54,163 nucleotides of DNA from Octopus sinensis. Its lineage: Eukaryota. The notes beneath the pieces were generated by a model. The model was given only the letters and a program-made list of their open reading frames with translations, did not search any database and was not told where the DNA came from. Positions 10,150-36,107 of this stretch are shown here, in pieces. Position 1 is the stretch's first letter. Each line of letters begins with the position of its first letter. Position numbers and translations under genes: made by a program. The stretch spans positions 1 through 54,163 of the forward strand of contig NW_021833831.1 of NCBI RefSeq assembly GCF_006345805.1, written 5' to 3'.

Positions 10150-11966
10150 GAGCAAATACCTGCCTGGCTATCCGAAGAAATAACATACCATCTACCAAAA
10201 ACTGAAAGTACGAAAAATCCGAAGAGCTATCGACCAATAATATGTCTCAGCACCACCTAGAGATCCTCACATCCATGCTAACTGAAATAATGTACACCAT
10301 CCTGGAACAGAACTCTCTCTATCCTTCCACAAGCTCAAAAAGGTTGTAAAAGGGATTCTTATGGATGCAAAGATCAATTACGCATAAATAAAGATTGAAG
10401 AGAACTGCCGGAGCAACAAGAACAACCTCAGTACAGCATAGAAAGACTACAGGAAAGCATTTGATAGTGTCCCACATAATTGGCTACTCAAGGTCCTTGA
10501 GATATACAAGATCTGTCCTGTCGTCTACAAATTCTGACAAGATAGCATGGCCAAGTGGAATGCACGTCTCCTTCTGAACCAAAGTAATAGGATGAGCCTA
10601 TCTAACAACATCGACATCAAACGAGGCATCTTTCAAGGGGAATCTCTCTCCACATTACTCTTTTGCATGGCACTGATCCCACTCTCAAACGAACCGAGTA
10701 TGGATTTAAAGTGTATAATATAGTAAATCACCTGTTTTATATGGACGATCTGAAGCTGTTTGCTAGAAGTGACCAAGAGCTTGTGGGGCTGTTAACAACT
10801 GTTAAAGAGTTCAGCAATGACATCGGGATGGAGTTTGGGCTTGATAAGTGTGCTAAAATAACTGTTTTAAGGGGAAAGCTGAAGCAAACAGCTTCCATTA
10901 AATTAGGTACTGTCACTATCATCAAGGAGCTTGACCCACAAGGAAGCTGTAAATACCTGGGGATAAACGAAGGAGATGGTATACAACATGCTACCATGAA
11001 GGTAAAATAAGAAACGAGTATTATAGGAGAATAAGACTCATACTAGAAACTGAACTCAACTCCAAAAATAGCCGGAAACCTCTGCATGGACAGTGTATAC
11101 TTCGAAGTCGAAATACTGATGTGGACCAAGCAACAACCCATCAGTGGCTGAGAAGCTCAGGACTGAAAGCAGAGACTGAAGGTTTTATATTAGCGACACA
11201 AGATCAACGCTTGCTTACAAAAAACTACCAGGCTAACGTTCTTCAAAATTACCCTAAATGCAGATTCTTCGATAAATTTGACGAAACAATATACCATCTC
11301 GTCTCGGGATGTCCTGAGATGACACCAAACTAATATAAAAATCGCCACGATAGGGTAGGAAATATTTACATTGGAAAATATGTAAACACTACAAAATCAG
11401 CACTCCTGCTTACTGGTATGAACATCATCCTGAGCCAGTCGCTGAAGGTAAAAATGTCACTATCCTTCAGGGATTTTCCAGTTACCACTGACAGAACGAT
11501 CCAGGTTAATCGACCAGACATAGTCATTAAAGACAGAGAAAACAATACTTGTGGACTAATATATGTGAGTGTTCCCACTGATAAAACTATATCTGTAAAG
11601 GAATTTGACAAATTAGGTAAATATTAAGATCTGGAAATTGAAATACAAAAGATGTGTCATTTTAAAGCGAGAACTGTTCCTATTATTGTAGGTGCCTTAG
11701 GTATGATAAGGGATATAGATAATATCCCAGGAGAACCATTTCTCAGAGAAATCCAAAAGATTGTGCTGACAAGTACTGCCCACATCCTTAAAAGTCCCCT
11801 ATCAATTTAGATGAGTGTTGTATTACATGAAGATATTTCGCTACTGCCCGTCACTTGCTTTCCCCAAGCTTTCTGTCATGCTGTAATATCTTTTATCCTT
11901 CACTCGCCTTAGGACGCTGGTTGTGCCTCGGCGAGTGATTGTAATAAATATTCAGATCAAAAATAA
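10150..11966 (+). mobile_element. R4/Dong-type RT-RLE non-LTR retrotransposon, decayed and internally deleted, followed by (GAA)n
   Basis: RT motifs RGIFQG and LFYMDDLKLFA..GMEFGLDKCA..KYLG; WLRSSGLKAETEGF..QDQ; zinc knuckle C..ETIYHLVSGC; RHDRVGKYLHWKIC; RLE RPDIVIKD..KY*DLEIE; multiple frameshifts. Confidence 0.92.
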
Positions 11967-11995
11967 AGAAGAAGAAGAAGAAGAAGAAGAAGAAG

Positions 11996-12024
<29 letters not shown>
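11967..12024. repeat. (GAA)n microsatellite
   Basis: Directly visible. Confidence 0.97.
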
Positions 12025-12026
<2 letters not shown>

Positions 12027-12049
12027 TTGACCTTTTAAAATGTGCGTTG

Positions 12050-13430
12050 ATAGTGATGTGACGAGGTAAGTTTGTCAGAACAGAAGGCGTACATATATGT
12101 CAACTGGTGAAATGATGAAGGCAATTGAGCCTGAATCTGGATGTAGATACCTTGTAATACTTTTTGAGCAGGTAGAATTAAGCATTATATTGTGAAATAC
12201 AAAACAAAAGAAAAGAAAAAGAAAGATCTGAGAAGAATTCTGAAGTCAAAGTTGAATGCTAGAAACGTAGTTTTGGCAATAAACTCGCGCGCTGCCGCTT
12301 TGCTTCGGTTTGAGGTAGGAATTGTTAGGCGGAGAGATGAGGATGAGCCGAGGCAGTTGGACAGGAAGACAAAAACGTCCCTAACAATAGATAGAGCTTA
12401 TTATTCTCATGCAGGCTCTGATCGCCCATACATTAAGAGAGCAAATAGAGGCAGGAGAGTGATAAGTGTGGAAAACTGCGGGCATATTGAACTTGGGAAC
12501 TTGCTGGAATACCTATCCCAAAGAGAGAAAACCTTGCTAGGGGCAGATAGAGATGCAGGTAGATTGAAAAAAAAAGAATAAAAGAAGAAATACAAGAAGA
12601 ATGTGAAGAACTACGCAACAAGGGACTTAATAATCAATTCCATATAGCCACAACTGAAGTTGCTGGAGAACATGGTTGAGACTGGGTGAAGAAAGGAACA
12701 CCCCAAAAATAGACACCATTCTGGCAGGTAAGACCAAGCTTTGGCCACAAATTGAAGGGTCAGATTAGAAATGAACAAGTGTTTCCACTGTGCTGAATAT
12801 GTAATAGAGATGACGAAAGCATTGTCCATATCGTAAAGGAATGCTCTTAGACTTGCCCAGAATTATTATAAGTTGTGGCGGCGCTATGAGGTAGCGAAAG
12901 TGCTACATTGGAAACTATGAAAAGTGGGGTTTAGAGAGAGAGAGAGGCAAGACATGGTAGGAGCACAAACCGCAGAGAGTGGCGGAGTCAGAGACCTTCA
13001 AAAGATGGTGGGATTTCCCAGTCCAACCAAGTGCTTAAGCACAAGCCGAACTTAATGATGATGGACAAAGTGAGCGTCCTGCGCTCTATCATTGACGCTG
13101 CGTGCTCCTTTGACCCATGAACAGTCAAGGAGAAACGCGAAAAAAAAAAAACGACATACAATCCTCTTAAATACGAGATAGCCCGACTATAGAAAATAAA
13201 GAAGGTAAAGATAGTGCCAATTATTTTTGGGTCCTCGGGGTTAGTATCAGAAGGCATCAAGCGGAATAGAAAGGAAATTGGAATAAAGTACCCAATAGAG
13301 TTGTTACGGAAGCTTTGCCTCCTTGGCACGGCCAGAAAACTGGTTGAAAAGAACAGATACCATGGTACCGTAGGATGCAGGTAGCAAGCCCGCTACCTAT
13401 ACAAGACTCCAAGAGTTCCAACGAAACCTG
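12050..13430 (+). mobile_element. Second, older R4/Dong-like RT-RLE fragment (thumb, RLE, 3' UTR)
   Basis: ILKSKLNARNVVLAINSRA..LDRKTK..GSDRPYIKRANRGRRVISVE, then LKYEIARL*KIKKVKIVPII..LRKLCLLGTAR. Confidence 0.75.
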
Positions 13431-13689
13431 AGTTAAAGAACAATATTATTGATGATGATTATGGAGGGGTAGATGAGTAATGGAACGAGGAAAGCTCCAC
13501 GAAATATGAGAGTACATGGTATGGTGAGGGGAACTGAAATAATTATATAGAACAGCTATTTCAATTCAAACACATCACCGTTTAAACCGATCGGAATATG
13601 ATATATCTCACATGCACTTGAAGGAAAAAGCCGTCTGCGTAGAGATATTAAGTATGTAGTAAACACGCTGTGTCTTGAAAAACTATTTA

Positions 13690-14130
13690 AAAGCAAAGAC
13701 ATGCAGACTGATTGATGCAACAATGCATCAGGAAAAGCTAAAGCCAAAATATATTTTCTCTCGTTGTATAAGGGAACAATATATAAGCAAACTAGGAAGC
13801 TGGTTTATACAAAAGAATGTGGTTTTAGATAAGGAAACAAAGCAAAGAAAAATGTAAAAGCAAAACAAAGGGGAAAAGGATAAAAATCATAGTTGAAAAG
13901 CAAAAGAAAAAAAATCAAGAGAAAGAACAAAACCCCTTCCTCCGCCAGAGTCAGTGTATTCAGGGAGAAAGTGGACTAATATACAATGGAACAATGGTTA
14001 AAAAGCTCGAGAATAAACAGATGAATGCCTAAACACAAGATCAATGCCTGGTCCAAACATTTACTACTTAATGGAGTAACAAGAGGTTAATGACACTACA
14101 CAGACTTCAGCCTATAAAAATCATCTTAAA
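13690..14130 (+). mobile_element. Very decayed R4/Dong-like remnant
   Basis: EQWLKSSRI and TQDQCL at ~13990-14065 match the WLRSSGLK..QDQ block. Confidence 0.35.
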
Positions 14131-14154
14131 GAATAGATCATATCATCATCATCG

Positions 14155-14208
<54 letters not shown>

Positions 14209-14265
14209 TATTATTATTATTATTATTATTATTTATTATTATTATTATTATATTATTATTATTAT

Positions 14266-16995
14266 CCGTAGTTTTATTTTTATAGCGTGCTTTCACTTCA
14301 CTACCGAGCGCAGCTCTGTGTGCCTTGGGTATGTGCTGTGATTTGTTGTGATGCTCTGATGGTTATTGTATGGAAAGTGTTCTGCGTAGGATGTGTGCAG
14401 TGCCTAGTAGTGCAATTTTCTGTATGTTATATGTGTTTGTAAGTCCTGGTGTTTTTGTTATGTATTTGTCTGAATATTTTTTTATCATGCCTATGATAGG
14501 AGTTGTTTCTGTTTTTAGATTCCACATTCTGGTTACCTCTATTTCCAGGTCTTTGTATTTTGAAAGTTTCTCCATTTCTTTTAGAGACAGGTTGTCATCT
14601 GCCGGTATTGATACATCAATTAGAAAGCATGTTTTTTTCTTCATGATCTCTGACAACTATATCTGGTCTGTTGGCCTTAATTTCTCTATCTGTGTGAATC
14701 GGCATATCCCAGAGTATGGTTGCTTTCTCGTTTTCTGTGACCTTTTCTGGTGTGTGCCTATACCATCTTTTTTCTGTTGTTATTCCATAATGTTGGCATA
14801 GTTTCCAGTGTATATAGGTCCCAACTCTGTCATCTCTGTGAATATATTCTTTCTTAGCCAGGACTGGGCAGCCAGAGATAATATGATTTATTGTTTCTTG
14901 TCCATCTCCACATATTCTGCAGTTACTTGTTATATTTCTTTTCATTACATGTTTTTGGTAATTTCTGGTGGGGAGGCTTTGGTCTTGTGCTGCAATTAAA
15001 AATCCTTCTGTCTCTGCTTTGAGTCCTGAGCTTCTCAACCATTGCTCAGATTTTTCTTTGTCTATTTCTTTTGCATTTAGTTTAGTCTAGTATTTACCAT
15101 GAAAGGGCTTTTCTTGCCATCGTTTTATCATGGTTCTTTGCTGTTCTAGTTCTAGTTTGGATTTCATTTGTTTTAAAGCTTTTGTTGTTTCTTCTTCTTC
15201 TTCTTCTTCTTCTTCTTCTTCTTCTTCTTCTTCTTCTCTTCTTCTTCTTCTTCTTCTTTCTTCTTCTTCTTCTCTTCTTCTTCTTCTCTTCTTCTTCTTC
15301 TTCTTATTCTTCTTCTTCATATTTGTTAGGTGGTATGATTTCTTGTTTGTATTTGTCAGCTTCCTTAAATACTGAGAACAGTTTTTTGTTTTGCTCGTGT
15401 ATTGCCGCTATCTGGATCAGTTTTCCTTCCTTCTGTAGTAGATATTTTTGCAGTCCTATGGTGGTTATTTTATAGTAGTTTTCCAGCTGTATAAGGCCTC
15501 TACCACCTTCTATACGTTGTATATATAGTCTTTCTATGTCAGATTTTGGGTGATGCCTCCTAGATCCTGTCATTATTTTTTTGTTTTCCTATCTATTTTG
15601 GTCAGTTCATTTAGTGTCCAGTTAAGGATATTGTAGCTGTAACTTATAACTGGGACAGCTAAAGTGTTAATACCTATTATCTTGTTTATAGCATTGAGCT
15701 CTGTTTTTAGTATTGATCTAACTCGTCTATAATATTCTTTTTTTTATTTTCTCTTTCATTTGTGTGTGTTGTGTCTTATCTAGTTCATGGATTCCTAAGT
15801 ATTTGTAAGTTTGGCTTTGGTCTAATTCTTTTATTTCATTGGTTTTATCTAGTGTGATGTTGCTACTCTTAACTAGTTTTCCTCTTTTCAGGGTTACTTT
15901 GGCGCATTTTCTAATCTAAATTACATATCTATTTCTTTGGTAAACCCATGATTTACCAAAGAAACAGTCTTTAATAGTGTTTCCAGCTGTTTGTCATTTG
16001 CAGCGTATAGTTTTAGGTCATCCATATATAAAAGGTGGCTGATCGTTTTGCCGTAACATTTATATCCGCATCCGGTTCTATTTAGCATAGATAGAGGTGA
16101 CAGTGCCAAGCAGAAAAGGAGTGGAGCGTATCTCCCTGGAATATTCCTCTTCTAATGGGGATGGCTTTGGTTTTCATGAGTCCCTGTTTTGTTTGGAGCT
16201 GTAGCACTGTTTGCCATTTATTCATAGAGTGTCCTATGAATTTTATAATTGTTGGTGCTACTTTGTTAATGGCTTGTGTTTCGAGGATCCATGTGTGGGG
16301 GATGCTATCAAACGCCTTTTTGTAATCGATCCTGGCCATACTGAGGCCTTTCTTCTTTCTGTGGCTGTCTTCAGTTATGGCTGTATTGATCATTAGTTGA
16401 TCTTTACAGCCATATGACCCTTTGCGGCATCTTTTCTTCTCTTCTGGAAACAGGTTGTTTTCGTCCAGAAGCGTGTTCAATCTTTGCGATATTACTGCAG
16501 TAAATGCTTTGTATATTGTAGGGAGACAGGTTATAGGTCTGTAGTTTTCTGGTTTTGCTGTCTCATTGGATTTGGGAATTAAGATGGTTTTCCCCTTCGT
16601 GAGCCATTCAGGCATTGTCTCTGGCTCTGCTAGTATGTTGTTAAAGTTTTCAGCCAGCTTTTTGTGCATTCCTGTTAGATATTCCTGTTGCTTAGTCTTT
16701 GCAGTGCCTGGGTGACTTCTTCAGTTGTTATGGGGGTCCAAAGTTGCTCAGATGCTGAGTTTGTTGTTTTAATACTCCTTTTTTTTGGTTGTTCGTTCGC
16801 CGACCATATTTCTCTCCAGAATTCTTCCACTTCTGCCGTTGGTGCTGCAGTGATTTCTATTTTATTTTTGCCAAGTTCTTGGTAGAAGTTTTTGGGGTTG
16901 GAGTTAAACTTTTTGTTTTGTTCAAAGAAACGGTGGCGTTTCTCGTACCGGCGAATCCTTTGTGCTTTGGCAAGGATATCTTGCTTTAGCTTTTC

Positions 16996-20943: not shown

Positions 20944-22150
20944 GAAATATGTTACAAAAGAAATATAAAATACACGTGGAAATGTAAGGGGAAAATATGA
21001 AAAATCAACGAAAATGCATATTGTAAATAAAAAAAGAAAAGGCTTCTTATGAAAGGTAACGACAGATATATACATTTAGATGGACTGAAGTAATCATAAA
21101 AGTCATTATTATGAGATGATTAAAAAGTCAGAAAGAAAAGCATACCATGGTTTCGTCATAAGCTATTCATTGTTTTGAATAAACACCGGCTAATGAACGG
21201 TGTCAGGTCTAATAGTTCCTGAGTAAAAAGAATATTTGTAAGGGAGGTAAGTAGTTCTGGATTTAGTGCAGTTGGGTTAGATATAGAATTGTAATGTGAA
21301 TGGTGTAGGGAGTGTACAGGGGTTAGTAGTGTTAATTGAAGGGTTAGTGGTGTTCTGTATTAAGTTGTGTGTTCATATTTAGTTGGGGAAGATATTTATT
21401 GATGAAAATTGCCTCTTTATTTAACCTTTGTTGCATTGAGGTGTTCTGTGAACATTGATAGAAGGGGAAGATTTGGAAATAAGGATTAAGATTCCTGACA
21501 CACCTCTCTATGTGTTCACTAACCTGTAACTGTCTGTATTGTGGGTGGCAAATTTGTTCTTTATGGATGGTGGTTCTTCGATGGAGTGATATTCCTGTTT
21601 GTCCAATATAGTGGTTACCACATCCTAAGCATGTCATGGCATAGAGCAGATTTTCCGAGGCGCAGGTGAAATTTGATTTGATCTTAAATATTTCTCCTTG
21701 TTAGAAGTGAAATTCTGAACCCTCCAAAAGGTGGGGGCATGTTACACAGTTAGGACGACCACATTTTTTCACTTTTGGCTCTGTTGTTAGTGGATATAGT
21801 CTTACGCTGGTTAATATTTTTTTCAGTGACTTCGGTTGCTTTTTGATTTTTATAATTTTCTATGAGCTTAAAATTTCGTTCATTGTTTTGTCTACTGTGA
21901 GGCTGGGAAGATTTTGGGCGATAATGTTGAAGGCTTCGTTGTTTCTAGGGTTATGTGTGGAAATGTACGGAAGTATTTTTAAGTCTGGTTTGGTATTTCG
22001 GCTGGCTTGCCTTAATATTTGTATATCTATTTCCTTAGCTCTTTTAATGCCATCATTTATTAATGAGCTTGTGTAATGTCTTTTAGTTAGTGTTGATCTA
22101 AGTTCAAGGAGTCTTTGTTCACGAGTATATGTATCCGAAACTATGGTACA
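20940..22150 (-). mobile_element. Penelope-like element, 5'-truncated: RT thumb, GIY-YIG endonuclease and pLTR/3' region
   Basis: YTREQRLLELRSTLTKRHY..LPYISTHNPRN; CGRPNCVTC; LLYAMTCLGCGNHYIGQTG..RRTTIHKEQ..EH..KEAIFINKYLPQLN. Confidence 0.92.
21138..21175 (-). ncRNA. Minimal type I hammerhead-like motif, A3-U8 variant, in the Penelope 3' region
   Basis: aaaca-ATGAATA-gcttatgac-GAAAC-catg-GTA-tgctt; stem I 4/5 pairs, palindromic stem III, weak stem II. Confidence 0.5.
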
Positions 22151-28744: not shown

Positions 28745-28956
28745 GGGGTAATGGTGTCAGTAAGACCCAAAGGTGTCAGGTAATGCTGAGTAAGTGCTAT
28801 GGATAGGCCATAGCTAAGCTCCAGGTTCGGTGATTATGCGAATAATGAGTCCAACGTAGGTCATATATCAGCATGCGTATATATAACTCGTTTCTTTTCA
28901 GAATGAGATAAAAAAAAACAAGGCTGTGAAGATTTTAGAACATTCATAGATAGAAG

Positions 28957-29004
28957 GTCTTACAGCTGTTTCCAGGATATTTATTATATCCCTTCATCGG
29001 AGAC
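28957..29004 (-). ncRNA. Type I hammerhead-like motif (U4C variant)
   Basis: gtct-CCGATGA-a gggatat aataa atatcct g-GAAAC-agct-GTA-agac. Confidence 0.65.
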
Positions 29005-29284
29005 AGTGTGAGAAAATGGTTAAGCAGTAGTTAGTTAATTTAGATAAGATACGAAATAGAGAGTGAAGTGGAGGAATGAAAATAGATGTGAGATATGTAG
29101 GGATACTGCATTGTAGATCCATTATTTAGGCAGAATTGTATACATATAAGATTCCAATACCTTTTGAGTAAAATCGAATAGTATCTAAAATTAGTCATTC
29201 CAAGTATAAAGTTTGTACATAGTACTATTGAATCAAGGGTTTTATCTAAATTAACTAACTATTCCTTAACCATTTTCTCACACC

Positions 29285-29332
29285 GTCTCCGATGAAGGGA
29301 TATAATAAATATCCTGGAAACAGCTGTAAAAC
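29285..29332 (+). ncRNA. Mirror copy of the U4C hammerhead-like motif, one stem I mismatch
   Basis: gtct-CCGATGA-..-GAAAC-agct-GTA-aaac. Confidence 0.55.
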
Positions 29333-29690
29333 CTTCTATTTATAAATGTTCTAAAATCTTCACAGCCTTGGACTTTTTATCTCATTCTGAAAAAAAAGTT
29401 TTATATATATATATATACAAATTTTGCAATTAAGGACAACCACTTAATAAGGAAAACTTAACAAGAAATTGTCAGGTAGATAGCGTAAAAACCTCATAAG
29501 AGAAAAAATTTCGAAAATAATTATTTCTTATTGAACATATTAATTTATATATAGAGGGCATAATTATACATACATGCCAGGAGGCATTATATATACTTGC
29601 CAACGCTAAGAGGGACAATCAGTCATTTCTACCAAAAATATTACTAATCCCACCGAATGCAACTTTTCAAAGTAAGACATTTAAAAATAT

Positions 29691-29738
29691 AGGCCTGTAT
29701 CACAGTGATTTCATACTTACGTAATCATCAGCAGGCCT
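29691..29738 (-). ncRNA. Type I hammerhead ribozyme, copy 1
   Basis: aggcctg-CTGATGA-t tac GTAA gta t-GAA-Atca ctg tgaT-A-caggcct; 7-bp stem I, 4-bp stem III, predicted cleavage after AUA (29698). Confidence 0.85.
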
Positions 29739-30172
29739 GAATGTATTATAAATAAACAACGACCCTGCCTCGCTTAAGCCGAACAGCTAACTGATCAACA
29801 TCAACGAAGCACATGGGTGAGTTTATATATATACATCCGGGTGAATGGCAAACTTTTACAAAATTGCATTTCGGGAGAGGAAAAAGTTTTTTCGGAATAA
29901 AAATTTTGCAATTAAGGACAACCACTTAATAAGGAAAACTTAACAAGAAATTGTCAGGTAGATAGCGTAAAAACCTCATAAGAGAAAAAATTTCGAAAAT
30001 AATTATTTCTTATTGAACATATTAATTTATATATAGAGGGCATAATTATACATACATGCCAGGAGGCATTATAATACTTGCCAAACGCTAAGAGGGACAA
30101 TCAGTCATTTCTACCAAAAATATTACTAATCCCACCGAATGCAACTTTTCAAAGTAAGACATTTAAAAATAT

Positions 30173-30220
30173 AGGCCTGTATCACAGTGATTTCATACTT
30201 ACGTAATCATCAGCAGGCCT
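30173..30220 (-). ncRNA. Type I hammerhead ribozyme, copy 2
   Basis: Identical motif 482 nt from copy 1. Confidence 0.85.
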
Positions 30221-30758
30221 GAATGTATTATAAATAAACAACGACCCTGCCTCGCTTAAGCCGAACAGCTAACTGATCAACATCAACGAAGCACATGGGT
30301 GAGTTTATATATATTACATCCGGGTGAATGGCAAACTTTTACAAAATTGCATTTCGGGAGAGGAAAAATGTTTTTTCGGAATAAAAATTTTGCAATTAAG
30401 GACAACCACTTAATAAGGAAAACTTAACAAGAAATTGTCAGGTAGATAGCGTAAAAACCTCATAAGAGAAAAAATTTCGAAAATAATTATTTCTTATTGA
30501 ACATATTAATTTATATATAGAGGGCATAATTATACATACATGCCAGGAGGCATTATATATACTTGCCAAACGCTAAGAGGGACAATCAGTCATTTCTACC
30601 AAAAATATTACTAATCCTCTCCCGAAATGCAATTTTGTAAAAGTTTGCCATTCACCCGGATGTAATATATATAAACTCACCCATGTGCTTCGTTGATGTT
30701 GATCAGTTAGCTGTTCGGCTTAAGCGAGGCAGGGTCGTTGTTTATTTATAATACATTC

Positions 30759-30806
30759 AGGCCTGCTGATGATTACGTAAGTATGAAATCACTGTGATAC
30801 AGGCCT
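30759..30806 (+). ncRNA. Type I hammerhead ribozyme, copy 3 (inverted)
   Basis: Identical motif on plus; H17 = 30799. Confidence 0.85.
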
Positions 30807-31064
30807 ATATTTTTAAATGTCTTACTTTGAAAAGTTGCATTCGGTGGGATTAGTAATATTTTTGGTAGAAATGACTGATTGTCCCTCTTAGCGTTTGGCA
30901 AGTATATATAATGCCTCCTGGCATGTATGTATAATTATGCCCTCTATATATAAATATATATATATACATATATATGTATACAGAGAGAGAGAGAAAGAAA
31001 GAGGGAGAGAGACAAAGAGAGAGAAAGAGTGTGTGTTTGAAGTGGTATACTCAATATCGTATAC

Positions 31065-31238
31065 TGAGAAAAAAAGGGGCAGTCAGAATTTTGGATAATC
31101 TTTTATTAGCGGTTTCGTTTGTTTACGAACTCGTCAAGACAAAATCAAAGTTTTGATTTTGATATTGTCTTGAGTTCGTAAACAAACGAAATCGCTAATA
31201 AAAGATTATCCAAAATTCTGACTGCCTCACTTTTCTCA
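31065..31238. repeat. Fold-back element (~80-nt arms) beside (TA)n
   Basis: ggcagtcagaattttggataatcttttattagcg..cgctaataaaagattatccaaaattctgactgcc. Confidence 0.88.
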
Positions 31239-35045: not shown

Positions 35046-35047
<2 letters not shown>

Positions 35048-35325
35048 TATTGGTGAATTGAAAAATGGAGCTGAACGCAGATTGAACAGAAATCGTTTTA
35101 TTTCATTCTACACGTGTTTCGAAAGGCACAAATTACCAAAATCCGATTGAATAATGGGACCATATTGTGTCTTTCTCTTCAGGAAGAAAGAAGGAATCCG
35201 TTGGAAAAACAAAAACAGAACAGAGGCGGAGCAAAAATTTGTGCCTTTCGAAACACGTGTAGAATGAAATAAAACGATTTCTGTTCAATCTGCGTTCAGC
35301 TCCATTTCTTCAATTCACCAATAAT
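35046..35325. repeat. Fold-back element (~90-nt arms, ~100-nt spacer) beside (TA)n
   Basis: Arms 35046-35134 and 35236-35325. Confidence 0.9.
35101..35189 (-). ncRNA. Type I hammerhead ribozyme with intact core and long stem II
   Basis: tttcttc-CTGAAGA-GAAAGACACAA..(~31-nt loop)..TTGTGCCTTTC-GAAAC-acgt-GTA-gaatgaaa; stem II 10/11 pairs including G10.1-C11.1; stem I 7 bp with one bulge. Confidence 0.85.
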
Positions 35326-35500
35326 GTTTTAATTTCAATTATCCGCACCAACGCACGGTTGCAACGCCAGATGGTAGTACCTCCAACCGTGCTGTTTACT
35401 GCTGTGATTTTTGCTACTAAGGTATCGGTTAAACTTTTGATTAATCTACTACAAGATTATTCATCTTTCTATTTCACATATATGTATATATATATATATA

Positions 35501-36018
35501 TGTATAACTTATAAACAAGAGCAAAAGAAAAAAAAATTCTAATGCCAAATATGGCGAAAATAGACCCATCATCAATAACCATATAATTCATCACTATAAG
35601 CACGTGTCTCGAAGAAAGCCGACAGGAATTTCTAAAAAATTCCGTTATTACCATATCGGACCCGATTTCAGAGTTAGTTCATAAGAACCTTCCCTTCATC
35701 AGTGATAAATGCGGCAAAGAAATAAATGAAATACTTATACCCATGGAAGAAGCAAACACTAAGTATGACTTAGTGTTTGCTTCTTCCATTTATTTCTTTG
35801 CTGCATTTATCACTGACGAAGAGAAGGTTCTTATGAATTAACTCTGAAATCGGGTCCGATATGGTAATAACGGAATTTTTTAGAAATTTCTGTCGGCTTT
35901 CTTCGAGACGCGTGCTTATAATGATGAATTATATGGTTATGGACGTTGTGTCTAGTTTCGGCATATTTGGCATTAGAATTTTTTTTCTTTTCCCCTTGTT
36001 TAATAAGTTGTTTATACA
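35501..36018. repeat. Fold-back element (~255-nt arms, 3-nt loop) beside (TA)n; degenerate HHR-like motif in arms
   Basis: Apex cactaagt-atg-acttagtg; CTGAYGAAG..CTTC-GAGAC-RCGT-GCT. Confidence 0.9.
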
Positions 36019-36107
36019 TTTAACCTTTAATGGTATTTTTTAATATGCTGGCCATTGATAAAATTTTTATCCTATGTTAGATGTATATATATATATAATA
36101 TATAATA

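What the first reader, a model, noticed from the sequence alone, without database searches (positions are those of the whole stretch)
29419..30955. ORF-less 483-bp tandem array with a complete hammerhead in every full unit: retrozyme-like element, predicted 482-nt monomer RNA
Seen: 2.5 near-identical tandem units plus an inverted partial unit between (TA)n tracts, no ORF of 60 aa or more, and the type I motif aggcctg-CUGAUGA-u uac GUAA gua u-GAA-Auca cug ugaU-A-caggccu at 29691-29738 (-), 30173-30220 (-) and 30759-30806 (+). Established: tandem type I hammerhead repeats are the hallmark of non-LTR retrozymes and Penelope pLTRs, and retrozymes give monomeric or circular RNAs. Inference: a minus-strand transcript self-cleaves at 30180/30179 and 29698/29697, releasing a 482-nt monomer that could circularise and be mobilised by Penelope RT. 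Oddities: U10.1.U11.1 instead of G-C, an AUA cleavage triplet, and palindromic stem I (caggcctg) and stem III strands that would allow dimeric folding. I do not know of such a family described in octopus, but I could not search.
Basis: partly seen in the sequence, partly recalled or inferred. Interest (0 to 1): 0.92.

Follow-up and report, generated by a model that had tools for sequence, protein, structure and literature searches.

The report
Hammerhead-ribozyme tandem repeat (retrozyme-type insertion)
A non-coding 482-bp repeat that carries a hammerhead self-cleaving RNA motif in every unit sits in a (TA)n microsatellite, and it looks like one more example of the already described animal "retrozymes" copied by Penelope-like retrotransposons; whether its unusual ribozyme cuts has not been tested.

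Summary
There are two full units (482 and 484 bp), a 234-bp partial unit and a 347-bp inverted partial copy, lying between (TA)n tracts. No ORF inside the array reaches 60 aa. An identical 48-nt type I hammerhead (HHR) motif sits at exactly the stated coordinates. Chance is very unlikely: 0 of 300 shuffled windows gave a comparable motif, and a second, unrelated HHR family lies 5 kb away.

The element fits the known metazoan non-LTR retrozymes and HHR satellites. GC is 33%. The 482-nt monomer RNA is strongly self-paired (z = -5.7). A Penelope-like element (PLE) fragment in the window is also bounded by (TA)n. The head-to-head copies with their 3' ends at (TA)n match the reported cutting and priming of both target strands by a PLE enzyme.

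Four caveats apply:
- Rfam does not call the motif (17.4 bits against a gathering score of 52).
- Helix II has only 3 bp, with U.U in place of the conserved G10.1-C11.1, so cleavage is unproven.
- All copies are near-identical, so there is no signal of selection.
- No eukaryotic genome database was available, so copy number, species ("octopus") and linkage to a PLE pLTR could not be tested.

Verdict: a new member of a known kind, of moderate interest.

The parts
29402..29416 (.). Left (TA)n tract. It abuts the 3' end (in sense orientation) of the tandem array.
29415..29896 (-). Tandem unit 1 (482 bp). The sense strand, which carries the HHR, is the minus strand.
29897..30380 (-). Tandem unit 2 (484 bp).
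30381..30614 (-). Partial third unit (234 bp), with no HHR. It ends at the inversion junction.
30615..30961 (+). Inverted, 5'-truncated partial copy (unit positions 468 to 123). It joins the direct part head-to-head with a TCC microhomology at the base of an internal hairpin of the unit. Its 3' end lies in the unit's own TA-rich tract and merges with the right (TA)n.
29691..29738 (-). Type I hammerhead motif, copy 1. A17 is at 29698, with predicted cleavage at 29698/29697.
30173..30220 (-). Type I hammerhead motif, copy 2. A17 is at 30180, with predicted cleavage at 30180/30179. It aligns to Rfam Hammerhead_HH9 at 17.4 bits.
30759..30806 (+). Type I hammerhead motif, copy 3, in the inverted copy. 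It is perfectly complementary to copy 2 in any read-through transcript.
29698..30179 (-). Predicted 482-nt monomer RNA between the two tandem cleavage sites. GC is 33%. MFE is -125.4 kcal/mol (z = -5.7 against shuffles). As a circle, MFE is -118.7 kcal/mol with 60% of bases paired.
30945..30980 (.). Right (TA)n tract.
35493..36022 (.). Second, unrelated HHR family. Two head-to-head arms (35493-35731 minus, 35784-36022 plus, about 90% identical) lie between (TA)n tracts. The HHRs are at 35648-35708 (-) and 35807-35867 (+). The three differences inside the HHR are all compatible with the structure.
28911..29378 (.). Third head-to-head foldback. The arms are 28911-29047 (-) and 29242-29378 (+), 93% identical. 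An HHR-like motif lies at 28957-29004 (-) and 29285-29332 (+), with CCGAUGA in place of CUGAUGA.
20945..22130 (-). 5'-truncated Penelope-like element. It comprises the C-terminal linker, Zn-finger and GIY-YIG coding region (22130-21344, two in-frame stops) plus the 3' UTR. (TA)n tracts lie at both ends.

Best explanation
The array is a retro-inserted, non-autonomous hammerhead repeat of the metazoan non-LTR retrozyme / HHR-satellite kind.

Shown:
- Two and a half ORF-less units of about 483 bp, each full unit carrying a type I hammerhead core.
- Low GC and a strongly self-paired monomer RNA.
- Insertion into a (TA)n microsatellite, with a 5'-truncated inverted copy head-to-head at the 5' end.
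- A Penelope-like element fragment in the same window with the same (TA)n boundaries.

Inferred mechanism:
1. A master copy elsewhere in the genome is transcribed as an oligomer.
2. The hammerheads, acting singly or as a double hammerhead through the self-complementary helix III strands, cut after A17. [quoted passage not shown]
3. A host RNA ligase may circularise these RNAs.
4. The RT and GIY-YIG endonuclease of a PLE that targets (TA)n copy the circular or oligomeric RNA by target-primed reverse transcription. Copying such a template explains the array of more than one unit.
5. Priming from both cleaved target strands, or snap-back of the cDNA at the unit's internal hairpin, explains the head-to-head inverted copy with both 3' ends in (TA)n.

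This locus is probably an insertion product rather than an efficient source of monomers. It can release at most one monomer per transcript. Its perfect inverted repeat would also compete with folding of one of its two tandem hammerheads.
For: Anatomy and identity of the units.

Core and topology: C3-A9, G12-A14, A15.1-U16.1 and H17 are all present, with helix I of 7 bp, helix II of 3 bp plus a GUAA loop, and helix III of 4 bp. The Rfam HH9 alignment places every core block correctly. The HHR fold lies 2 kcal/mol above the MFE.

Not chance: 0 of 300 shuffles matched. A second family with no other sequence similarity has the same architecture, and its two 90%-identical arms differ inside the HHR only at N7, G-U to A-U and G-C to G-U.

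Retrozyme features: no ORF of 60 aa or more; GC 33% and z = -5.7 for linear and circular folds. Published criteria are low GC, tandem type I HHR, highly self-paired circRNAs and co-occurrence with PLEs (PMC7229834). Published consensus lengths are 51-972 bp, and most families have at most 7 units (bioRxiv 10.64898/2026.07.22.740005).

PLE link: the window fragment matches the C-terminal 250 aa of 720-820-aa RVT_1 + GIY-YIG proteins. It is bounded by (TA)n. Its closest relative has a min-HHR 54 nt after the stop codon, and its contig ends in (TA)n. Literature support: PLE insertions often have an inverted 5'-truncated copy upstream and a microsatellite bias; a PLE enzyme cleaves and extends both strands in vitro (PMC11167929); dual HHRs on opposite strands 100-700 bp apart have been reported (PMC4209133).
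Against: - Rfam gives no hammerhead hit at gathering thresholds, nor at E<=10 on the 1.8-kb region. Only 17.4 bits against 52 appears on a 96-nt slice.
- G10.1-C11.1, described as highly conserved in canonical and PLE hammerheads, is U.U here, and helix II has only 3 bp. G10.1 is a metal ligand (my knowledge), so activity may be low.
- All three copies are identical, so nothing shows selection on the motif.
- Only one locus of this family is in the window. No external homologue could be retrieved, so mobility and copy number are not shown.
- The unit shows no sequence similarity to the window's PLE 3' UTR.
- The 291-bp perfect inverted repeat would sequester HHR copy 2.
- The few 1-nt indels between units could be assembly noise, and the copy number could be an assembly artefact.
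Confidence: 0.72

Rival explanations
1. The hammerhead is a relic. The repeat descends from an HHR-bearing element (a retrozyme or PLE pLTR), but this family's hammerhead is catalytically dead or nearly so. The array is then simply a decaying retro-insertion or a local tandem duplication, and no monomeric or circular RNA is produced.
For: - U10.1.U11.1 replaces the highly conserved G10.1-C11.1, and helix II has 3 bp.
- The Rfam score is far below threshold.
- PLE-type hammerheads show very low activity in vitro (PMC4209133), and HHR cleavage was not needed for PLE insertion in vitro (PMC11167929).
- A neighbouring HHR-like element carries C4 in both arms, which would be expected to inactivate it.
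Against: - Every strictly invariant core position is intact in all three copies, and helices I and III are perfect.
- The units are almost identical, so the insertion is young.
- The monomer is far more self-paired than expected (z = -5.7), as in expressed retrozyme circRNAs.
Confidence: 0.2
2. The array is a fragment of an autonomous PLE. The units would be tandem pLTRs of a Penelope-like element whose ORF has been deleted, or lies outside the array, rather than a separate non-autonomous family.
For: - PLEs form tandem or partial-tandem copies, with HHRs in their pLTRs and an inverted 5'-truncated copy upstream.
- Xenopus retrozymes are homologous to PLE pLTRs.
- A PLE fragment lies 7 kb away.
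Against: - No RT or EN coding sequence lies within or next to the array.
- The unit repeats directly, head to tail, with nothing between copies.
- It has no similarity to the 3' UTR of the window's PLE or of its closest relative.
Confidence: 0.06
3. Chance motif or assembly artefact. The hammerhead-like string would be coincidental inside an ordinary tandem duplication, or the tandem and inverted arrangement would be a misassembly of a single copy.
For: - There is only one independent copy of the motif.
- The arms are 100% identical, and the differences between units are 1-nt indels in low-complexity tracts, which are typical of sequencing error.
Against: - 0 of 300 shuffles produced a comparable motif, and the fixed pattern is expected 0.04 times per window.
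- Two further HHR or HHR-like head-to-head elements lie in adjacent (TA)n tracts.
- The inversion junction has a defined microhomology at an internal hairpin, which points to a real template switch.
Confidence: 0.02

Closest known systems
Metazoan non-LTR retrozymes (Cervera & de la Pena 2020, PMC7229834; Li, Clavereau & Pollet 2026 preprint, 10.64898/2026.07.22.740005)
   Same: Both are ORF-less tandem repeats with one type I hammerhead per unit. Both have low GC and a strongly self-paired monomer RNA, and both co-occur with PLEs. The small copy number and the 482-bp unit fall within the published 51-972 bp range.
   Different: This unit is larger than the 170-400 nt originally reported for invertebrates. 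The hammerhead has U.U at 10.1/11.1 and a 3-bp helix II with a GUAA loop. Expression, circularity and dispersal across the genome are unknown here. The head-to-head inverted copy and the (TA)n target are documented here for the individual locus.
pDo500 satellite DNA of Dolichopoda cave crickets (Rojas et al. 2000; PMC2837043)
   Same: It is a repeat of about 500 bp (463-505 bp) with an embedded hammerhead of about 49 nt. That hammerhead processes multimeric transcripts to monomers, and both single and double hammerhead modes have been proposed for it.
   Different: pDo500 is a high-copy satellite that is conserved across species, with proven cleavage and documented compensatory changes. Here there is one short array with identical copies and no functional data.
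Minimal hammerheads in the pLTRs of Penelope-like elements (Cervera & De la Pena 2014, PMC4209133)
   Same: Both have type I topology. Both occur as pairs on opposite strands 100-700 bp apart, have palindromic helix III sequences that suggest dimeric action, and are associated with PLE-type insertion architecture.
   Different: PLE min-HHRs have helix III of 0-2 bp, helix II of 7-8 bp, a conserved G10.1-C11.1 pair and an extra nucleotide after A9, and they flank an RT-EN ORF. The array's HHR has a 4-bp helix III and a 3-bp helix II, lacks the G-C pair and flanks no ORF.
Newt/axolotl satellite 2 and Schistosoma Sm-alpha hammerhead repeats
   Same: They are tandem, transcribed repeats of about 330 bp with type I hammerheads, some of which need a dimeric conformation to cleave.
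   Different: They are very high copy, belong to different lineages and have canonical G10.1-C11.1. Their activity and their RNAs have been shown experimentally.

Membership tests
Hammerhead ribozyme, type I (Rfam clan CL00010) | Invariant core: C3 U4 G5 A6 N7 G8 A9, G12 A13 A14, A15.1-U16.1, and H17 that is not G | tested here: met
   CUGAUGA ... GAA ... A..U-A is present in all three copies and is aligned block for block by the HH9 model.
Hammerhead ribozyme, type I (Rfam clan CL00010) | Three helices around the core, with helix I open and helices II and III closed by loops | tested here: met
   Helix I has 7 bp, helix II has 3 bp plus a GUAA loop, and helix III has 4 bp plus a CUG loop. The fold energy is -11.0 against an MFE of -13.0 kcal/mol.
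Hammerhead ribozyme, type I (Rfam clan CL00010) | Conserved G10.1-C11.1 closing pair of helix II | tested here: not met
   U10.1.U11.1, flagged as non-canonical in the cmscan alignment. Its conservation is stated in PMC4209133.
Hammerhead ribozyme, type I (Rfam clan CL00010) | Score at or above the gathering threshold of an Rfam hammerhead model | tested here: not met
   No hit at gathering thresholds or at E<=10 on 1.8 kb. Hammerhead_HH9 gives 17.4 bits against 52, E = 0.031, on a 96-nt slice.
Hammerhead ribozyme, type I (Rfam clan CL00010) | Site-specific self-cleavage after H17 | not testable with these tools
   This needs in vitro transcription or mapping of RNA ends.
Metazoan non-LTR retrozyme | [quoted passage not shown] | tested here: met
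   Units of 482 and 484 bp plus partial units, with an HHR in each full unit.
Metazoan non-LTR retrozyme | No protein-coding capacity and no LTRs | tested here: met
   The longest internal ORF is 59 aa, and the units abut directly. PBS and PPT motifs were not searched for specifically.
Metazoan non-LTR retrozyme | Low GC (<45-50%) and a highly self-paired monomer RNA | tested here: met
   GC is 33%. The linear MFE z-score is -5.73 and the circular z-score is -5.73, with 60% of bases paired.
Metazoan non-LTR retrozyme | Co-occurrence with autonomous PLEs in the same genome | tested here: met
   A PLE C-terminal fragment lies at 22130-21344 (-). It has two in-frame stops, so an intact PLE is not shown.
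Metazoan non-LTR retrozyme | Multiple dispersed genomic copies (mobility) | not testable with these tools
   The window holds only this locus. No eukaryotic genome collection was available. The metagenome and viral scans and the ORF look-ups found nothing relevant.
Metazoan non-LTR retrozyme | Expression as linear and circular monomer RNAs | not testable with these tools
   No transcriptome data were available.
PLE pseudo-LTR | The repeat flanks an RT + GIY-YIG ORF | tested here: not met
   No such ORF lies in or next to the array. The unit is unrelated to the 3' UTR of the window's PLE.

The most novel reading that the evidence does not exclude
This would be a natural hammerhead that cleaves efficiently without the G10.1-C11.1 pair, and so without the G10.1 N7 metal ligand. 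It would belong to a lineage in which all the HHR families seen here deviate at 10.1/11.1: U.U in the array, A-U in family 2, and A.G in the third element and in the PLE relative on L002. These families would be mobilised by a (TA)n-targeting PLE that primes on both strands. The resulting loci would be long perfect hairpins that could also feed dsRNA pathways such as siRNA or ADAR editing.
Probability: 0.15. Interest if true: 0.55.

Novelty: new member of a known kind. Interest (0 to 1): 0.35.

Why it matters
If the family proves active and dispersed, it would add another invertebrate lineage to the list of animals carrying circRNA-forming retrozymes.

The locus also gives unusually clear structural evidence for the proposed but unproven idea that Penelope-like elements mobilise retrozymes. 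The array and the PLE fragment share the same (TA)n target. The head-to-head copies have their 3' ends at the target, as expected if both strands prime reverse transcription.

The U.U at 10.1/11.1 would be a useful natural test of how far helix II and the G10.1 metal site can be degraded in a full-length hammerhead.

Otherwise this is an ordinary repeat annotation.

Tried and rejected
1. Rfam. At gathering thresholds on the whole window there was nothing. At E<=10 on 1.8 kb there was only miRNA-like noise from TA tracts and hairpins. The motif aligned to Hammerhead_HH9 only on a 96-nt slice, and weakly. Family 2 and the C4 element gave no hammerhead hit at all.

2. External homologues.
   - Exact look-ups of four ORFs from the unit found nothing.
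   - A degenerate HHR pattern scan of the metagenome contigs gave one hit, inside a bacterial coding sequence, which I judged to be chance.
   - The same scan of viral contigs gave none.
   - Literal sequence strings were not found in the paper library.

3. Species identification.
   - The word-indexed protein search with the PLE endonuclease piece found nothing.
   - The same search with a Zn-finger ORF found nothing.
   - The LINE RT ORF gave only unnamed hits of at most 53% identity.
   - 'Octopus' therefore remains unverified.

4. Similarity between the unit and family 2, the third element, the PLE 3' UTR or the L002 3' UTR: none. Derivation from this PLE's pLTR is therefore not supported.

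5. A possible hammerhead remnant in the PLE 3' UTR (UGACGAAACCAUGGUA, 21158-21143, minus strand) could not be completed into a full motif. I left it as a remark.

6. A relaxed-descriptor hit at 11600-11663 (U3-A8 core) is at the level expected by chance, 0.185 per shuffle.

7. TRF missed the 483-bp period.
Full report

Yes. Reading the sequence, the repeat finder, blastn of one unit against the window and a MAFFT alignment of the units all give the same anatomy:
- unit 1 at 29415-29896 (482 bp);
- unit 2 at 29897-30380 (484 bp);
- a partial direct unit at 30381-30614;
- an inverted partial copy at 30615-30961, corresponding to unit positions 468 down to 123.

The units differ only by four single-base indels in TA or A runs, plus one base at the left edge. 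(TA)n tracts flank the array at 29402-29416 and 30945-30980. TRF did not list the 483-bp period, but the other tools did. The longest ORF wholly inside the array is 59 aa.

The 48-nt string AGGCCUG-CUGAUGA-UUACGUAAGUAU-GAA-AUCACUGUGAU-A-CAGGCCU occurs, identical, at 29691-29738 (-), 30173-30220 (-) and 30759-30806 (+).

**2. Is the motif more than chance?**

The fixed pattern is expected 0.04 times per window. I wrote an RNAmotif-style descriptor: CUGANGA, a helix II hairpin, GAAA, helix III, U-H, and helix I.
- It found five sites in the window, belonging to two unrelated sequence families.
- In 300 dinucleotide-preserving shuffles of the window, hits with helix I of at least 6 bp averaged 0.017.
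- Hits that also had helix III of at least 3 bp were never seen.

Because the three array copies are identical, they count as one observation. The second family is independent.

**3. How good a hammerhead is it?**

All strictly conserved positions are present: C3-A9, G12-A14, A15.1-U16.1 and H17 = A. The topology is type I: helix I is open (7 perfect bp), helix II is closed by GUAA, and helix III has 4 bp and is closed by CUG.

The hammerhead fold costs -11.0 kcal/mol against an MFE of -13.0, so it is accessible but not dominant. The helix III strands of two copies can pair with each other (-12.1 kcal/mol), so a double hammerhead is possible in an oligomeric transcript.

Three points weigh against it:
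- Rfam gives no hammerhead hit at gathering thresholds, or even at E<=10 on the 1.8-kb region.
- Only on a 96-nt slice does Hammerhead_HH9 align, at 17.4 bits (gathering score 52, E = 0.031). Every core block is placed correctly, and only the 10.1/11.1 pair is flagged.
- That pair is U.U instead of the G10.1-C11.1 that Cervera and De la Pena call highly conserved, and helix II has only 3 bp. From my own knowledge, G10.1 N7 helps bind a catalytic-site metal, so weaker activity is a real possibility.

I rate 'derived from and shaped like a hammerhead' as very likely. I rate 'cleaves efficiently' at about even odds.

**4. What surrounds it?**

The window contains more of the same kind of element.

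(a) Second HHR family. At 35493-36022, two arms of about 240 nt lie head-to-head between (TA)n tracts. Each carries a 61-nt hammerhead, at 35648-35708 (-) and 35807-35867 (+), with a 6-bp helix I, an interrupted helix II and a 4-bp helix III. The arms are about 90% identical. The three differences inside the hammerhead fall at N7 (U/C), at a G-U that becomes A-U, and at a G-C that becomes G-U, so all are compatible with the structure. This family shares no other sequence with the array unit. Rfam does not recognise it.

(b) Third, HHR-like element. At 28911-29378 a third head-to-head foldback abuts the array's left (TA)n. Both arms carry GUCU-CCGAUGA-A-[7-bp hairpin]-G-GAA-AC-AGCU-GU-A-AGAC. 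This has the long helix II, short helix I and palindromic loop 3 of PLE-type minimal hammerheads. However, it has C instead of U at position 4, so it may be inactive or may not be a hammerhead at all.

(c) PLE fragment. At 22130-21344 (-) there is a reading frame with two in-frame stops that encodes a CX2C...GIY-YIG-like C-terminus.
- Pfam GIY-YIG is only weak (15.8 bits).
- An exhaustive phmmer search found 3471 relatives. The query aligns to the last 250 or so residues of 720-820-aa proteins that carry RVT_1 and GIY-YIG, which is the canonical EN+ Penelope-like architecture.
- The fragment is cut off at a (TA)n tract on its 5' side, and its 3' UTR ends in (TA)n.
- Its closest relative (59% identity) lies on locus L002. 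That locus has a minimal hammerhead 54 nt after the stop codon, and the contig ends in (TA)n.

**5. How the locus was probably made.**

In sense orientation (minus strand), the inverted, 5'-truncated copy lies upstream of the tandem units. The two pieces meet head-to-head, and both 3' ends abut (TA)n.
- The junction (30614/30615) has a TCC microhomology. It sits at the base of an internal hairpin of the unit, where positions about 236-260 pair with positions about 445-468.
- The 3' end of the inverted copy falls inside the unit's own TA-rich tract. This is what priming by a (TA)n DNA end would give.

Published descriptions match this:
- PLE insertions are tandem or partial-tandem, often carry an inverted 5'-truncated copy upstream, and have a microsatellite bias (Craig et al. 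2021).
- A purified PLE protein cleaves and extends both target strands in vitro, unlike R2 or L1 (Frangieh et al. 2024).
- Dual hammerheads on opposite strands 100-700 bp apart have been noted in Schistosoma.

An array longer than one unit is what reverse transcription of a circular or oligomeric template gives. I therefore infer target-primed reverse transcription by a (TA)n-targeting PLE, with either second-strand priming or cDNA snap-back producing the inversion. None of these steps is demonstrated here.

**6. The RNA.**

The 482-nt monomer has 33% GC. It folds at -125.4 kcal/mol against -94.9 +/- 5.3 for shuffles (z = -5.73). As a circle it folds at -118.7 kcal/mol (z = -5.73, 60% paired), while the antisense strand gives z = -3.96. 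Helix I closes the whole molecule. This matches the 'highly self-paired' circRNAs of animal retrozymes.

There is a caveat for this locus. The arms 30074-30364 and 30615-30905 are 100% complementary. A transcript that includes the inverted copy would therefore form a dsRNA of at least 291 bp that buries hammerhead copy 2. Only transcripts starting inside the array could release the single possible monomer. The locus looks like an insertion product, not a master copy.

**7. Comparison with what is known.**

Tandem type I hammerhead repeats are long established:
- They have been known since newt satellite 2, Schistosoma Sm-alpha and the cave-cricket pDo500 satellite, a 463-505-bp repeat with a 49-nt hammerhead.
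- They were re-interpreted as non-LTR retrozymes in 2020. Experimental circRNAs were shown in a coral, a mussel and the axolotl, and bioinformatic evidence came from many invertebrate phyla.
- A 2026 preprint reports consensus lengths of 51-972 bp, a maximum of seven or fewer units in 75% of families, and homology of Xenopus retrozymes to PLE pLTRs.
- Penelope elements are abundant in coleoid cephalopods.
- I found no paper that describes retrozymes in cephalopods. I also could not confirm that the window comes from an octopus.

The array meets every sequence-level criterion of a non-LTR retrozyme that I could test. It fails the G10.1-C11.1 criterion and the Rfam threshold for a canonical hammerhead. 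It does not meet the defining feature of a pLTR, which is to flank an RT-EN ORF.

**8. Verdict.**

The element is a new member of a known kind. Points of modest extra interest are the non-canonical 10.1/11.1 position, which is shared in different forms by all the HHR or HHR-like motifs seen here, and the locus-level evidence that ties these repeats to a (TA)n-targeting PLE. Interest is 0.35.

Noticed in passing
window 35493-36022: A second hammerhead family, unrelated in sequence to the array. Two head-to-head arms, about 90% identical, lie between (TA)n tracts, with a near-perfect central palindrome at about 35738-35790. The HHRs are at 35648-35708 (-) and 35807-35867 (+). The differences between the arms inside the HHR preserve the structure. 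Rfam does not detect it.
   Followed up: yes
window 28911-29378: A third head-to-head foldback (137-nt arms, 93% identical, 194-nt loop) next to the array's left (TA)n. Both arms carry an HHR-like motif with CCGAUGA (C4 instead of U4), a 7-bp helix II, and a 2-bp helix III with a palindromic AGCU loop.
   Followed up: partly
window 20945-22130 (-): A 5'-truncated Penelope-like element (Zn-finger plus GIY-YIG C-terminus, two in-frame stops) bounded by (TA)n at both ends. Its 3' UTR contains UGACGAAACCAUGGUA (21158-21143), which may be a remnant of a minimal hammerhead.
   Followed up: partly
L002 1231-1269 (+) and the contig end: The closest relative of the window's PLE endonuclease (59% identity, from an ENA metagenome scaffold) has a minimal hammerhead, CGCUAA-CUGACGA-...-GAAACCGGU-U-UUAGCG, 54 nt after its stop codon. 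The contig ends in (TA)n, which suggests that this PLE lineage targets TA microsatellites.
   Followed up: partly
window 30074-30364 / 30615-30905: A 291-nt, 100% complementary inverted repeat; the inverted copy as a whole spans 347 nt, almost all of it complementary. Any read-through transcript would form a long perfect dsRNA hairpin, a potential siRNA or ADAR substrate that would also mask one hammerhead.
   Followed up: no
window 31070-31234 and 35046-35318: Two further short palindromic or foldback elements (arms of about 63-90 nt) sit directly beside (TA)n tracts. No hammerhead motif was found in them. They could be MITE-like elements or other snap-back insertions.
   Followed up: partly
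window 10663-16669: Fragments of LINE-type reverse transcriptase on both strands (RVT_1 at 10663-11010 + and 16082-16669 -; zf-RVT at 14616-15038 -). Their best database relatives are only about 53% identical and are unnamed.
   Followed up: partly
window 11600-11663 (+): A relaxed hammerhead descriptor (U3-A8 core variant) gives a hit here. This is at the rate expected by chance (0.185 per shuffled window) and is probably spurious.
   Followed up: no
whole window: The window is extremely rich in (TA)n, (CA)n, (GA)n and TATG/TACA-type microsatellites, which generate many spurious long ORFs and miRNA-like Rfam hits. GC is 35.5%.
   Followed up: no
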